64,000 bases of DNA from Phaeosaccion multiseriatum (Eukaryota; Protista; Ochrophyta, other classes), in the NCBI GenBank assembly GCA_965112735.1, contig OZ218951.1, positions 2,294,001-2,358,000 of the forward strand, written 5' to 3'. Shown here piece after piece: positions 8,612 through 14,600 of this stretch (positions are counted from its first letter, which is position 1; each line of letters starts with the position of its first letter). The position numbers and the translations under genes are program-made. A model generated the notes under the pieces. It saw only the letters and a list, made by a program, of their open reading frames with translations, had not been told where the DNA came from and did no database searches.

Positions 8612-11600
8612 ATGAAGGCCTTCCATCCCTTCCAGATGCTACCGTCTATGGTAGCTCTGATTTGCTTTGGATTGCTCCTCGCCTTTGCTGCTGCTACTAC
8701 GCCACCAACCCCGGTACCAGCTCTTCCGGTGAGCAAAGTGGAGCGGGCAGAAGGGATGGGGGGAGATTAACGCGTCACGGATGGAGCCTCAACTCAATCC
8801 GGCCTTAACCGGCTTAACCCCCTCTCCCCTCTCGCCCCCTCAACCCATTCCAGACGCCTTCGCCAGACGGGACCACAGTAGCTCCGGTAAGAAAGGGTGG
8901 AGCATGCTGGTCTTGGGAAGATATTCTCCTCTTACACTCGTCAGCCCGAAATCAGGCCTGACCCCCCTCCCCCTCTCTCGGCCCCTCAACCCGTTCCAGA
9001 CCCCAGCCCCGACGCTTTCGCCACCATTGGTGCCAACAGTAGCTCCGGTAAGCAAGGGGGGAAAGCATGGGTGGAGCATTCTTGAATATCACACCTCTGT
9101 CCACCTCAGTCGATTTGGCCTTAACCCCCTGTCCCCTCTCGTCCCCTCACCCCTCTCCAGACGCCTGCCCCGGACCCGGTAACAGATCCACCGACGCCGG
9201 TACCAGTAGCTCCGGTAAGCAAGGGCGGAGCATGGGTGGAGCATTCCCGAATATCACACACCTCAGTCAATTTGGCCTTGACCCCCTCTCATCCTCCTTC
9301 ACCCATCTCCAGACGCCTGCCCCGGAGCCCGTAACAGAGCTACCAACGCCGGTACCAGTAGCTCCGGTAAGCAAGGGCGGAGCATGGGTGGGGCATTCCC
9401 GAATATCACACCTCTTTCCACCTCAGTCGATTTGGCCTTAACCCCCTGTCCCCTCTCGTCCTCCTTCACCCCTCTCCAGACGCCTGCCCCGGAGCCGGTA
9501 ACAGATCCACCAACACCGGTACCAGTAGCTCCGGTAAGCAAGGGCTGAGCATGGTGGAGTATTCCCGAATATCACACCTCTGTCCACCTCCAGTCGATTT
9601 GGCCTTAACCCCCTGTCCCCTCTCGTCCCCTCACCCCTCTCCAGACGCCTGCCCCGGAGCCCGTAACAGAGCTACCAACGCCGGTACCAGTAGCTCCGGT
9701 AAGCAAGGGCGGAGCATGGGTGGGGCGTTCCCGAATATCACACCTCTTTCCACCTCAGTCGATTTGGCCTTAACCCCCTGTCCCCTCTCGTCCTCCTTCA
9801 CCCCTCTCCAGACGCCTGCCCCGGAGCCGGTAACAGATCCACCAACACCGGTACCAGTAGCTCCGGTAAGCAAGGGCTGAGCATGGTGGAGTATTCCCGA
9901 ATATCACACCTCTGTCCACCTCAGTCGATTTGGCCTTAACCCCCTGTCCCCTCTCGTCCCCTCACCCCTCTCCAGACGCCTGCCCCGGAGCCCGTAACAG
10001 AGCTACCAACGCCGGTACCAGTAGCTCCGGTAAGCAAGGGCGGAGCATGGGTGGGGCGTTCCCGAATATCACACCTCTTTCCACCTCAGTCGATTTGGCC
10101 TTAACCCCCTGTCCCCTCTCGTCCTCCTTCACCCCTCTCCAGACGCCTGCCCCGGAGCCGGTAACAGATCCACCAACACCGGTACCAGTAGCTCCGGTAA
10201 GCAAGGGCTGAGCATGGTGGAGTATTCCCGAATATCACACCTCTGTCCACCTCAGTCGATTTGGCCTTAACCCCCTGTCCCCTCTCGTCCCCTCACCCCT
10301 CTCCAGACGCCTGCCCCGGAGCCCGTAACAGAGCTACCAACGCCGGTACCAGTAGCTCCGGTAAGCAAGGGCGGAGCATGGGTGGGGCGTTCCCGAATAT
10401 CACACCTCTTTCCACCTCAGTCGATTTGGCCTTAACCCCCTGTCCCCTCTCGTCCTACTTCACCCCTCTCCAGACGCCTGCCCCGGAGCCGGTAACAGAT
10501 CCACCAACACCGGTACCAGTAGCTCCGGTAAGCAAGGGCTGAGCATGGTGGAGTATTCCCGAATATCACACCTCTGTCCACCTCAGTCGATTTGGCCTTA
10601 ACCCCCTGTCCCCTCTCGTCCCCTCACCCCTCTCCAGACGCCTGCCCCGGAGCCCGTAACAGATCTACCAACGCCGGTACCAGTAGCTCCGGTAAGCAAG
10701 GGCGGAGCATGGGTGGGGCGTTCCCGAATATCACACCTCTTTCCACCTCAGTCGATTTGGCCTTAACCCCCTGTCCCCTCTCGTCCTACTTCACCCCTCT
10801 CCAGACGCCTGCCCCGGAGCCGGTAACAGATCCACCAACACCGGTACCAGTAGCTCCGGTAAGCAAGGGCTGAGCATGGTGGAGTATTCCCGAATATCAC
10901 ACCTCTGTCCACCTCAGTCGATTTGGCCTTAACCCCCTGTCCCCTCTCGTCCCCTCACCCCTCTCCAGACGCCTGCCCCGGAGCCCGTAACAGAGCTACC
11001 AACGCCGGTACCAGTAGCTCCGGTAAGCAAGGGCGGAGCATGGGTGGGGCGTTCCCGAATATCACACCTCTTTCCACCTCAGTCGATTTGGCCTTAACCC
11101 CCTGTCCCCTCTCGTCCTACTTCACCCCTCTCCAGACGCCTGCCCCGGAGCCGGTAACAGATCCACCAACACCGGTACCAGTAGCTCCGGTAAGCAAGGG
11201 CTGAGCATGGTGGAGTATTCCCGAATATCACACCTCTGTCCACCTCAGTCGATTTGGCCTTAACCCCCTGTCCCCTCTCGTCCCCTCACCCCTCTCCAGA
11301 CGCCTGCCCCGGAGCCCGTAACAGAGCTACCAACGCCGGTACCAGTAGCTCCGGTAAGCAAGGGCGGAGCATGGGTGGGGCGTTCCCGAATATCACACCT
11401 CTTTCCACCTCAGTCGATTTGGCCTTAACCCCCTGTCCCCTCTCGTCCTCCTTCACCCCTCTCCAGACGCCTGCCCCGGAGCCGGTAACAGATCCACCAA
11501 CACCGGTACCAGTAGCTCCGGTAAGCAAGGGCGGAGCATGGTGGAGTATTCCCGAATATCACACCTCTGTCCACCTCAGTCGATTTGGCCTTAACCCCCT

Positions 11601-14600
11601 GTCCCCTCTCGTCCCCTCACCCCTCTCCAGACGCCTGCCCCGGAGCCCGTAACAGATCTACCAACGCCGGTACCAGTAGCTCCGGTAAGCAAGGGCGGAG
11701 CATGGGTGGGGCGTTCCCGAATATCACACCTCTTTCCACCTCAGTCGATTTGGCCTTAACCCCCTGTCCCCTCTCGTCCTCCTTCACCCCTCTCCAGACG
11801 CCTGCCCCGGAGCCGGTAACAGATCCACCAACACCGGTACCAGTAGCTCCGGTAAGCAAGGGCTGAGCATGGTGGAGTATTCCCGAATATCACACCTCTG
11901 TCCACCTCAGTCGATTTGGCCTTAACCCCCTGTCCCCTCTCGTCCCCTCACCCCTCTCCAGACGCCTGCCCCGGAGCCCGTAACAGAGCTACCAACGCCG
12001 GTACCAGTAGCTCCGGTAAGCAAGGGCGGAGCATGGGTGGGGCGTTCCCGAATATCACACCTCTTTCCACCTCAGTCGATTTGGCCTTAACCCCCTGTCC
12101 CCTCTCGTCCTCCTTCACCCCTCTCCAGACGCCTGCCCCGGAGCCGGTAACAGATCCACCAACACCGGTACCAGTAGCTCCGGTAAGCAAGGGCTGAGCA
12201 TGGTGGAGCATTCCCGAATATCACACACCTTAGTCGATTTGGCCTTAACCCCCTGTCCCCTCTCGTCCCCTCACCCCTCTCCAGACGCCTGCCCCGGAGC
12301 CGGTAACAGATCTACCAACGCCGGTACCAGTAGCTCCGGTAAGCAAGGGCGGAGCATGGGTGGAGCATTCCCGAATATCACACACCTCAGTCGATTTGGC
12401 CTTAACCCCCTGTCCCCTCTCGTCCCCTCACCCCTCTCCAGACGCCTGCCCCGGAGCCGGTAACAGATCTACCAACGCCGGTACCAGTAGCTCCGGTAAG
12501 CAAGGGCGGAGCATGGGTGGGGCAGGCCAATGTTTGGGTAGACATGCAGCTGCTCACGCGTTGCCCTGCGTTTCCCCTCTCGTCCCCTCAACCCTTTCCA
12601 GACGCCTGCCCCTGCGCTCGCGACCCTTCCGCCAACACCGACACCGACAACGACTCCAACGGCACCACCAATTGCAGGCACGGCTGCACCCACGTCCCCT
12701 CCAACGTCCCCTCCAACGTCACCTCCCACGTCCCCTCCAACGTCCCCTCCAACGTCACCTCCCACGCCCTCTCCCATTCTTCTCACCTCTCCTCCCACCC
12801 CAGCCCCCATCCCTCCCACCCCATCTCCCACACCAGCCCCCATCTTACCCACTCCTTCTCCCACACCAGCCCCCATCCCTCTCACCTCTCCTCCCACACC
12901 AGCCCCCATCCCTCCCACCCCATCTCCCACACCAGCCCCCATCTTACTCACTCCTCCTCCCACACCAGCCCCCATCTTACCCACTCCTCCTCCCACACCA
13001 GCCCCCATCCCTCTCACCTCTCCTCCCACCCCAGCCCCCATCCCTCCCACCCCATCTCCCACACCAGCCCCCATCTTACCCACTCCTCCTCCCACACCAG
13101 CCCCCATCCTCCTCACTCCTCCTCCCACCACCCCTCCCTTTCCCTTCATCCCTGTCACTCCTTTTCCTAGCGAACCTCCCACACCAGCCCCCATCCCTCC
13201 CACCCCATCTCCTACACCAGCCCCCATCTTACTCACTCCTCCTCCCACACCAGCCCCCATCTTACCTACTCCTCCTCCCACACCAGCCCCCATCCCTCTC
13301 ACCTCTCCTCCCACCCCAGCCCCCATCCCTCCCACCCCATCTCCCACACCAGCCCCCATCTTACCCACCTCTCCTCCCACACCAGCCCCCATCCCTCTCA
13401 CCTCTCCTCCCACACCAGCCCCCATCTTACCCACTCCTCCTCCCACACCAGCCCCCATCCCTCTCACCTCTCCTCCCACACCAGCCCCCATCCCTCCCAC
13501 CCCATCTCCTACACCGGCCCCCATCTTACCCACTCCTCCTCCCACACCAGCCCCCATCTTACCCACTCCTCCTCCCACACCAGCCCCCATCCCTCTCACC
13601 TCTCCTCCCACACCAGCCCCCATCCCTCCCACCCCATCTCCTACACCGGCCCCCATCTTACCCACTCCTCCTCCCACACCAGCACCCATCCCTCTCACCT
13701 CTCCTCCCACACCAGCCCCCATCTTACCTACTCCTCCTCCCACACCAGCCCCCATCCCTCTCACCTCTCCTCCCACCCCAGCCCCCATCCCTCCCACCCC
13801 ATCTCCCACACCAGCCCCCATCTTACCCACCTCTCCTCCCACACCAGCCCCCATCCCTCTCACCTCTCCTCCCACACCAGCCCCCATCTTACCCACTCCT
13901 CCTCCCACACCAGCCCCCATCCCTCTCACCTCTCCTCCCACACCAGCCCCCATCCCTCCCACCCCATCTCCTACACCGGCCCCCATCTTACCCACTCCTC
14001 CTCCCACACCAGCCCCCATCTTACCCACTCCTCCTCCCACACCAGCCCCCATCTTACCCACTCCTCCTCCCACACCAGCCCCCATCCCTCTCACCTCTCC
14101 TCCCACACCAGCCCCCATCCCTCCCACCCCATCTCCTACACCAGCCCCCATCTTACTCACTCCTCCTCCCACACCAGCCCCCATCTTACCCACTCCTCCT
14201 CCCACACCAGCACCCATCCCTCTCACCTCTCCTCCCACACCAGCCCCCATCCCTCTCACCTCTCCTCCCACCCCCGCCCCCATCCCTCTCACCCCATCTC
14301 CCACACCAGCCCCCGTCTTACCCACTCCTCCTCCCACCCCAGCCCCCATCCCTCCCACCCCATCTCCCACCCCAGCCCCCATCTTACTCACTCCTCCTCC
14401 CACACCAGCCCCCATCTTACCCACCCCTCCTCCCACACCAGCCCCCATCTTACCCACTCCTCCTCCCACGTCGGCCCCCATCCTTCCCACCTCTCCTCCC
14501 ACCCCACCTCCCACATCGGCCCCCATCCTTCCCACCTCTTCTCCCACCCCACCTCCCACATCGGCCCCCATCCTTCCCACCCCTCCTCCCACATCGGCCC

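What the first reader, a model, noticed from the sequence alone, without database searches (positions are those of the whole stretch)
8854..12601. Tandem array of 21 near-identical phase-0 microexons with near-identical introns in a cell-surface mucin-like gene
Seen: the 331-bp 'satellite' is a dimer of exon+intron units. Every unit keeps ctccag|ACG and CCG|gtaagc splice sites and a 54-nt exon. Across the core, the alternating variants encode [18 protein letters not shown] and [18 protein letters not shown], with a few DL hybrids. Diverged, shorter founder-like exons lie at the 5' edge (33 and 48 nt). Inference: any subset can be skipped in frame, and unequal crossover can add or remove exons, giving a splicing- and recombination-tunable length and charge dial for a surface protein. 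Near-identical introns imply very recent expansion or concerted evolution, and the array is a snapshot of mass intron gain by tandem duplication.
Basis: partly seen in the sequence, partly recalled or inferred. Interest (0 to 1): 0.8.

Follow-up and report, generated by a model that had tools for sequence, protein, structure and literature searches.

The report
Tandem microexon cassettes in mucin-like gene
A 3.5-kb "satellite" in this stramenopile alga is really 21 near-identical copies of a 54-base exon plus its intron, sitting at the start of a gene for a giant membrane-anchored, proline-rich surface protein. This is a clean but fairly ordinary case of a gene growing by copying exon-intron units, and nothing yet shows that the cell uses it as an adjustable dial.

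Summary
Window 8854-12495 carries 23 phase-0 microexons (33, 48 and 21 x 54 nt). All 24 introns (98-125 nt) keep GT..AG. The core is a 331-bp two-cassette repeat.

The exons link a signal-peptide exon (8612-8728) in frame to a 10,299-nt Pro/Thr-rich exon. That exon leads on to a Cys-rich exon, one transmembrane helix and a tail of about 890 residues. The model is 28 exons and 5,151 codons with no internal stop, a type I mucin-like protein.

The array shows the marks of unequal crossing-over. A and B cassettes alternate strictly, five copies of each are base-identical, and the edge units are diverged.

Exons are no better conserved than introns (92.6% against 94.5%). Only two codons vary, so there is no sign of selection for diversity.

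The "length and charge dial" is arithmetically possible but untested. The array supplies only 378 of about 4,200 ectodomain residues, and every cassette carries the same -2 charge.

"Mass intron gain" here means copying an existing intron, not creating a new one.

No transcript, gene model or orthologue was found. The scan had already noted at least seven other exon+intron cassette arrays elsewhere in this genome, and the design is published for brown algae. This is a new member of a known kind.

The parts
8612..8728 (+). Exon 1: ATG plus 39 codons, hydrophobic signal peptide, ends in phase 0 at a gtgagc donor. Its last 27 nt are homologous to the 3' half of the cassette exon (22/27).
   Evidence: hydrophobic 19-mers begin at residues 6-14
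8854..8886 (+). 33-nt phase-0 microexon ([11 protein letters not shown]), an old diverged cassette.
   Evidence: exon 70-73%, intron 63% identical to the core
9000..9047 (+). 48-nt phase-0 microexon ([16 protein letters not shown]), an old diverged cassette.
   Evidence: exon 65%, intron 68-70% identical to the core
9161..12495 (+). 21 exons of 54 nt (18 codons each) separated by 20 introns of 98-113 nt, every one GTAAGC...CTCCAG. Exon starts: 9161, 9313, 9480, 9645, 9812, 9976, 10143, 10307, 10474, 10638, 10805, 10969, 11136, 11300, 11467, 11631, 11798, 11962, 12129, 12285, 12442.
9367..12182 (+). Homogenised core: 17 cassettes in strict A/B alternation (331-bp dimer). Five A and five B cassettes are base-identical, and three neighbouring A cassettes share one private intron variant.
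12496..12601 (+). Last intron of the array (106 nt). Its ends match the cassette intron and its middle is unique.
12602..22900 (+). 10,299-nt exon of 3,433 codons: P 45%, T 20%, A 9%, S 8%. It is entered in the only frame that stays open throughout and ends in phase 0 at a gtaagt donor. Built from 33/45/99-nt repeats within roughly three megarepeats.
23464..24272 (+). Exon with Pro-rich linkers and one Cys-rich module of about 45 residues (C..C..C..C..C..C-RFCG-F..C-P). No Pfam family.
24661..24772 (+). 112-nt exon. Restores phase 0.
25137..28040 (+). Last exon: the single transmembrane helix (about residues 4231-4260 of the model), then a low-complexity cytoplasmic tail of about 890 residues and the stop codon.

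Best explanation
The array is a real run of exon+intron cassettes at the 5' end of one 28-exon gene (8612-28040, + strand). The gene encodes a type I membrane-anchored, mucin-like protein of 5,151 residues.

Each cassette is a 54-nt phase-0 exon plus an intron of about 110 nt. Each adds 18 residues of an acidic Pro/Val/Thr/Glu spacer to the membrane-distal N-terminal tip.

A few old cassettes existed first: the end of exon 1, the 33- and 48-nt exons, and the last intron with the start of the big exon. A two-cassette unit of 331 bp was then amplified very recently, and kept uniform, by unequal crossing-over or gene conversion.

By default the short introns are removed one by one, so all cassettes are included. 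Occasional skipping or copy-number change is tolerated because every product stays in frame.

Shown here: the anatomy, the frame logic and the repeat structure. Inferred: splicing, inclusion, membrane topology, glycosylation and the recombination mechanism.
For: All 24 introns keep GT..AG. 23 of 23 microexons are multiples of 3 with no stop.

Intron retention would break the frame. 22 of 24 intron lengths are not a multiple of 3, and the other two carry an early in-frame stop.

The cassettes join an ATG/signal-peptide exon to the only frame of the downstream 10.3-kb stretch that is open throughout: 1 stop, against 18 and 34 in the other two frames. The whole model has no internal stop and exactly two hydrophobic segments, a signal peptide and one TM helix.

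In the 21 core units no exon column has an indel, against 19 intron columns (at least 6-7 events). The two older exons differ in length by 21 and 6 nt, both multiples of 3.

The higher-order repeat structure is clear. A and B alternate strictly. Within a type identity reaches 167/167. Edge units sit outside both clades.

The unit is not a dispersed element. The genome holds only this array and one remote fragment of about 2 units.

The introns have no Rfam match and no stable fold, z = 0.3-0.6.

The same architecture is published for brown algae, with alternative splicing of the cassettes (PMC3341825, PMC11378527). The scan also noted it repeatedly elsewhere in this genome (those notes were not rechecked).
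Against: No RNA evidence of any kind was available. No gene model, transcript-derived protein or orthologue turned up in the public protein sets.

Exons are not better conserved than introns between the A and B cassettes: 50/54 against 104/110. So sequence conservation cannot show that the exons are under selection.

The indel argument alone is weak, with chance about 0.07-0.10. Reading frames in C-rich low-complexity DNA stay open easily. Copy number rests on an assembly whose reads I cannot see.
Confidence: 0.7

Rival explanations
1. The cell uses regulated or stochastic skipping among the 21 interchangeable cassettes, and strains use copy-number change, to set the length and negative charge of the protein's distal tip as a functional adaptation.
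For: All cassettes are symmetric phase 0 with identical splice sites, so any donor-acceptor pairing stays in frame. Each cassette carries net charge -2, while the first 3,000 residues of the big exon hold only 14 acidic residues. Tandem LRR cassette exons of brown algae do show alternative combinations in transcripts (PMC11378527).
Against: No transcript data. The array contributes 378 of about 4,200 ectodomain residues. The intronless 10.3-kb repeat exon is a far larger recombination target. Charge per cassette does not vary. Short introns of about 110 nt favour nearest-neighbour splicing (inference).
Confidence: 0.15
2. The array is an intronic minisatellite of pseudo-exons. Exon 1, or the 48-nt exon, is spliced straight to 12602, and the 54-nt segments are never or rarely in the mRNA.
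For: Exon and intron parts diverge equally, as expected of neutral DNA. The array is very young, so intact frames and splice sites need no selection to explain them. A remote copy of about two units, 715 kb upstream on the same contig, looks non-coding.
Against: The cassette splice sites are as good as or better than those that would have to be used instead: GTAAGC against GTGAGC at exon 1, and the same C/T-rich tract plus CAG. The spliceosome has no visible way to ignore them. The older, 30-37% diverged cassettes still keep frame, GT..AG and Pro-rich coding.
Confidence: 0.1
3. Assembly artefact: the array, or most of its copies, is an expansion produced by the assembler.
For: Five A and five B cassettes are base-identical. 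No reads could be inspected.
Against: The assembly has 22 contigs for 67 Mb, which suggests long reads that would span 3.5 kb. Private variants have an ordered layout: three adjacent A cassettes share one intron variant, the DL hybrids sit at fixed places, and one cassette has a 1-nt insertion. That is not what a collapsed or expanded consensus looks like. Diverged edge units frame the array.
Confidence: 0.05

Closest known systems
One-repeat-per-exon cassette arrays of brown algae (ROCO/LRR 72-nt exons, NB-ARC-TPR exons; Zambounis et al. 2012 PMC3341825; Teng et al. 2024 PMC11378527)
   Same: Same lineage (stramenopile, brown-algal relatives). Tandem exon+intron units, equal-length symmetric exons, turnover by duplication, and in-frame skipping seen in transcripts of the LRR genes.
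   Different: Those exons encode folded repeats with hypervariable ligand-face codons. In Ectocarpus the phenomenon was reported as overwhelmingly restricted to LRR/TPR genes. Here the exon encodes a low-complexity Pro-rich spacer with only two variable codons.
Titin PEVK region (about 80-116 short exons; block duplications and triplications; PMC6469411)
   Same: Many short exons each encode a Pro/Glu/Val-rich unstructured segment. Recent duplication of exon-intron blocks. From my own knowledge of Freiburg 2000 and Bang 2001, not checked here: differential splicing sets the length of the spring. The cassette composition here is P+E+V+T = 82%.
   Different: Animal, intracellular, Lys-rich. Inclusion levels are documented there and not here. 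No homology.
Spider Flag and Argiope MaSp2 silk genes (Hayashi & Lewis 2000, as cited in PMC3563967)
   Same: [quoted passage not shown]
   Different: Silk exons are hundreds to thousands of nt, not 54 nt. No membrane anchor.
Fibrillar collagen 54-bp exons (PMC4450265, PMC2852846)
   Same: A domain built by amplifying a primordial 54-bp, 18-residue phase-0 exon with its intron. The unit size is identical.
   Different: Collagen exons encode Gly-X-Y triplets and are ancient, with diverged introns. This peptide has no Gly, so the shared size is a coincidence of multiples of 9 or 18.
Schistosome micro-exon genes (MEGs; bioRxiv 10.1101/2023.06.21.545858)
   Same: Secreted proteins, symmetric microexons, in-frame exon skipping as a proposed source of variation.
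   Different: MEGs are small genes made almost wholly of 3-81-bp exons with long introns and are not tandem identical cassettes. Here microexons make up 8% of the coding sequence.
Membrane-tethered mucins and plant/algal hydroxyproline-rich glycoproteins (AGP-like)
   Same: Signal peptide, very long Pro/Thr/Ser/Ala-rich repeat domain (P+A+S+T = 82% of the big exon), single TM helix.
   Different: No SEA, VWD, fasciclin or other marker domain by Pfam. Glycosylation is untested. In animal mucins the repeat domain usually sits in one large exon (my own knowledge), as the 10.3-kb exon does here. The microexon part is the unusual addition.

Membership tests
Tandem exon+intron cassette array (tandem exon duplication with symmetric phase) | Head-to-tail repeats, each holding one exon and one intron | tested here: met
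   TRF periods 167 and 331. Unit alignment.
Tandem exon+intron cassette array (tandem exon duplication with symmetric phase) | Exons of equal length, a multiple of 3, same phase at both ends, no stop | tested here: met
   21 x 54 nt plus 33 and 48 nt, all phase 0.
Tandem exon+intron cassette array (tandem exon duplication with symmetric phase) | Canonical splice sites kept in every unit | tested here: met
   GT..AG in 24/24 introns. GTAAGC and CTCCAG in all 21 core units.
Tandem exon+intron cassette array (tandem exon duplication with symmetric phase) | Exons present in mature mRNA | not testable with these tools
No transcript data. No gene model or transcript-derived protein found.
Diversifying cassette receptors (brown-algal LRR/TPR type) | Hypervariable codons evolving faster than the introns | tested here: not met
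   A against B: 4/54 exon differences (2 synonymous, 2 replacement) against 6/110 intron differences plus 3 gap columns.
Mucin-like / PTS-domain surface protein | Signal peptide, long Pro/Thr/Ser-rich tandem-repeat domain, membrane anchor | tested here: met
   Composition. Two hydrophobic segments only, one N-terminal and one starting near residue 4231. Signal peptide and TM helix were judged by hydropathy, not by a dedicated predictor.
Mucin-like / PTS-domain surface protein | Dense O-glycosylation | not testable with these tools
   Only permissive evidence: 11 matches to the prolyl-hydroxylase-type domain PF13640 in the genome.
Pfam PT repeat (PF04886) | Match to the family profile above its cut-off | tested here: not met
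   Two stretches of the big exon, 1,000 and 1,133 residues, gave 0 families, although the low-complexity database hits carry PF04886.
Introner-like or mobile intron element | Many dispersed near-identical intron copies in unrelated genes | tested here: not met
   The own-genome DNA search found only the array and one remote 2-unit fragment. 2 candidate regions, both scored.
De novo intron creation by tandem duplication of an AGGT-containing exon segment (PMC3265369, PMC4974935) | The new intron is made of duplicated exon sequence and its removal restores the original mRNA | tested here: not met
   Each unit adds 18 new codons. The intron copies a pre-existing intron that is already present in the old flanking units.
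Schistosome-type micro-exon gene | Most of the coding sequence lies in symmetric microexons | tested here: not met
   Microexons are 1,215 of 15,456 coding nt, or 8%.

The most novel reading that the evidence does not exclude
Because 22 identical donors and acceptors lie within 3.4 kb, splicing could be inherently noisy. Each cell would then make a ladder of isoforms with 0 to 21 acidic 18-residue cassettes at the outermost tip of a micrometre-long surface stalk. Strains would differ in cassette number. That would be a built-in generator of surface length and charge heterogeneity in a protist, evolving by satellite-like dynamics inside a coding region.
Probability: 0.15. Interest if true: 0.55.

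Novelty: new member of a known kind. Interest (0 to 1): 0.3.

Why it matters
It gives a clean, datable example of how a gene gains about 20 introns and 378 codons in one burst by amplifying an exon+intron cassette. It happens in the algal lineage where such cassettes are best known from candidate immune receptors.

It shows that the process is not limited to folded repeat domains. A featureless Pro-rich spacer can grow the same way, right next to an intronless 10-kb repeat exon in the same gene. Together with the other arrays noted in this genome, this suggests cassette amplification is a general habit of the genome rather than a receptor-specific device.

It also matters for annotation. Arrays like this are likely to be masked as satellites or mis-modelled by gene finders.

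Tried and rejected
(1) Public gene model or transcript for this gene. A word search with the big exon gave only low-complexity hits, all 53% identity or less. A full HMMER search with the Cys-rich exon gave only weak hits, best E = 7.6e-17, to proteins sharing a Cys module or PT linkers. Neither found a self protein or an orthologue.

(2) Introner or mobile-element origin. Rejected: the unit is not dispersed.

(3) Functional RNA in the near-identical introns. No Rfam family (one hit, E = 0.71, at 8721-8765 across the exon 1/intron 1 boundary, outside the repeated introns) and no stable fold.

Local DNA alignment of the A and B exons against the 10.3-kb exon scored 23-28. The 95th percentile for codon-shuffled exons was 29. 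Only the first 11-14 nt of the big exon match. Pro codon use also differs sharply: CCG is 48% in the microexons and 4% in the big exon. Not supported.

(5) Population or relative copies in metagenomes. An exact 20-nt donor-junction pattern gave one unrelated AT-rich contig.

(6) Paralogues with similar arrays. The juxtamembrane exon has one partial paralogue, 87% identical, about 134 kb downstream of it, with no Pro-rich array.

(7) Pfam on all the large exons: nothing above the cut-offs. The ESM Atlas gave no usable lead.

(8) Coding on the minus strand. The 3,492-codon minus-strand ORF over the big exon is the expected mirror of CCN-rich DNA. It has no splice or signal logic, and no minus-strand ORF of 150 codons or more lies within the array itself.

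(9) Left out. Single 18-residue exons are too short for the protein searches. Exons were joined only inside one script, to count stops, composition and hydropathy. No joined sequence was printed or saved.
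Full report
**What is there**

Tandem Repeats Finder reports one array at 9037-12524. It has period 167 (21.2 copies, 92% matches) and, better, period 331 (10.6 copies, 97% matches, score 6462).

Parsing the region by splice motifs gives 23 short exons between 8854 and 12495: 33 nt, 48 nt and 21 x 54 nt. Each is preceded by ..CCAG and followed by GTAAG. 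All 21 of the 54-nt exons have tctccag|ACG and CCG|gtaagcaa.

- Nine exons encode [18 protein letters not shown], and the first 54-nt exon has D for the first E.
- Seven encode [18 protein letters not shown].
- Four are D-L hybrids.

The 24 introns are 98-125 nt long. 22 of them are not a multiple of 3 and 18 carry an in-frame stop. Each has at least one of these features, so the array cannot be translated without splicing.

**The gene around it**

An ATG at 8612 opens a 39-codon exon with a hydrophobic signal-peptide-like core. It ends in phase 0 at a GTGAGC donor. Its last 27 nt match the 3' half of the cassette exon at 22 positions, so the repeat series starts inside exon 1.

After the last cassette, a 106-nt intron leads to 12602. 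From there one frame is open for 3,461 codons; the other two frames have 18 and 34 stops. That is exactly the frame delivered by the phase-0 cassettes.

This exon (12602-22900) is 45% Pro, 20% Thr, 9% Ala and 8% Ser. It ends in phase 0 at a GTAAGT donor.

Three further exons follow: 23464-24272, 24661-24772 and 25137-28040. They encode:
- Pro-rich linkers around one Cys-rich module.
- A single transmembrane helix.
- A low-complexity tail of about 890 residues.

For frame bookkeeping only, the 28 exons were joined inside one script. They give 15,456 nt and 5,151 codons, with no internal stop and exactly two hydrophobic segments, one at the N-terminus and one starting near residue 4231. No joined sequence was printed, saved or sent to a search tool.

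The architecture is that of a type I membrane-tethered mucin-like protein, and the cassettes encode its membrane-distal tip. Signal peptide, topology and glycosylation are inferred. Pfam finds no domain on any of the large exons. The genome does carry prolyl-hydroxylase-type domains, which is only permissive evidence for hydroxyproline.

**How the array is built**

I aligned the units as preceding intron plus exon. Units 6-22 alternate strictly between an A and a B form.

- Five A cassettes are base-identical to each other, and so are five B cassettes.
- Three neighbouring A cassettes share one private intron variant.
- A and B differ at 4 of 54 exon positions (two synonymous, two replacement, in adjacent codons). 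In the introns they differ at 6 of 110 positions plus three gap columns.
- The four cassettes at the two edges fall outside both clades.
- The 33- and 48-nt cassettes, and the last intron with the start of the big exon, are only 61-73% identical to the core.

A homogenised centre with diverged edges and a two-unit higher-order repeat is the classic footprint of unequal crossing-over and gene conversion in tandem arrays. That is established knowledge about satellites, applied here by inference.

**Are the 54-nt pieces really exons?**

Evidence for:
- The frame logic described above.
- GT and AG are invariant in 24 of 24 introns, while 17 of 116 intron columns vary within the core.
- No exon column has an indel, against 19 intron columns (at least 6-7 events). 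Chance of that is about 0.07-0.10.
- The two old exons differ in length by 21 and 6 nt, both multiples of three.
- The older, 30-37% diverged cassettes still code for Pro-rich peptide with intact splice sites.

Evidence against:
- Exons are no better conserved than introns.
- The core is so young that intact frames need no selection to explain them.
- No RNA evidence could be obtained.

The word search with the big exon returned only low-complexity hits at 53% identity or less. The full HMMER search with the Cys-rich exon returned only weak hits, best E = 7.6e-17. So no gene model, transcript-derived protein or orthologue of this gene is in those collections.

Single 18-residue exons are below the size the protein searches accept.

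Because the cassette splice sites are at least as good as the flanking ones, I judge default inclusion the most likely outcome (0.7).

**What it is not**

- It is not a dispersed introner-like element. The genome holds only this array and one remote fragment.
- The introns match no Rfam family and fold no better than shuffles.
- It is not a diversifying cassette system of the LRR kind. Only two codons vary.
- It is not de novo intron creation by duplication of an AGGT segment (PMC3265369, PMC4974935). Each unit adds 18 codons and copies an intron that was already there.
- The idea that the big exon is an inflated copy of the microexon is not supported at DNA level. Alignment scores of 23-28 fall within the codon-shuffled null, whose 95th percentile is 29. 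Pro codon use is also quite different: CCG is 48% in the microexons and 4% in the big exon.

**The 'dial'**

Arithmetically, any subset of cassettes can be skipped in frame. Each cassette is 18 residues with net charge -2. The array totals 378 residues and -42. The first 3,000 residues of the big exon hold only 14 acidic residues. So the array forms an acidic cap on a nearly uncharged stalk.

Three points limit the idea:
- The cap is under a tenth of the ectodomain.
- All cassettes carry the same charge.
- The neighbouring 10.3-kb exon is a much larger recombination-prone repeat.

In brown algae, tandem LRR exons do appear in different combinations in transcripts (PMC11378527), so the idea has precedent in the lineage. 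Here it remains untested.

**Comparison with what is known**

Exon+intron cassette arrays are described in several systems:
- Brown-algal ROCO/LRR and NB-ARC-TPR genes. In Ectocarpus they were reported as overwhelmingly restricted to those families (PMC3341825).
- Titin's PEVK region, with about 100 short exons and recent block duplications (PMC6469411).
- Spider Flag and MaSp2 genes, with near-identical introns within a gene (PMC3563967).
- Fibrillar collagens, built from a primordial 54-bp, 18-residue exon (PMC4450265).

Earlier notes of this scan list at least seven other cassette arrays in this same genome: LRR, lectin solenoid, LNR and Cys/His repeats. I did not recheck those notes.

What this locus adds is a low-complexity Pro-rich spacer built this way in a stramenopile, beside an intronless repeat exon in the same gene.

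**Verdict**

It is a new member of a known kind. Interest is 0.3. The most novel reading still open is a noisy-splicing ladder of surface isoforms plus strain copy-number variation, at about 0.15 probability.

Noticed in passing
L012:4621-4925 (G000:C2:1579144-1579424, about 715 kb upstream of the window on the same contig, same strand): An isolated copy of about two cassettes (exon-intron-exon-intron) with splice sites intact. Its one full aligned unit is about 94-96% identical to array units and mixes A-type and B-type features. It lies between the stop of a MYND zinc-finger ORF and a histidine-kinase gene. Continuing in phase 0 into the next exon-like stretch meets a stop, and no upstream start was seen, so it is probably non-coding. 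How it got there is unexplained.
   Followed up: partly
window 23590-23790; proteins P0017, P0020, P0029, P0030, P0033: A Cys-rich module of about 45 residues (consensus CS..CL.S...PCF.DE.CP.GGLGC.A.G...CRFCGF.DF..CP) with no Pfam family. It recurs, often in tandem and flanked by PT linkers, in proteins from other organisms in the public collections. It may be an undescribed extracellular domain.
   Followed up: partly
window 12602-21700: The 10.3-kb exon is made of roughly three megarepeats of about 3.5 kb. Each opens with a shared segment of about 60 residues (..[22 protein letters not shown]..), found at 12620, 16046 and 19580. A fourth occurrence at 21917 lies in the acidic C-terminal repeat zone. 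The second and third copies are preceded by an acidic spacer (..[23 protein letters not shown]..).
   Followed up: partly
L021:6455-7197 (G000:C2:2451918-2452196, minus strand, about 94 kb beyond the window end): A partial paralogue (87% identity over 93 residues) of the juxtamembrane exon 23464-24272, together with a match to the following small exon. It lies in a gene that has no Pro-rich array upstream.
   Followed up: partly
window 22901-23463: The intron after the big exon holds a (CT)n microsatellite of about 240 nt (23157-23393).
   Followed up: no
window 27030-27110 (residues about 630-655 of the last exon): The cytoplasmic tail contains a run of about 25 Glu followed by poly-Gln and poly-Pro. 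The whole tail is low-complexity, with only sub-threshold Pfam hits.
   Followed up: no
window 51989-55109, minus strand: A purple acid phosphatase gene (fn3_PAP, Pur_ac_phosph_N, Metallophos, Metallophos_C). At least one intron splits the conserved GDISYA..Q|WDEF motif, with a GTATGG donor and an AAG acceptor.
   Followed up: no
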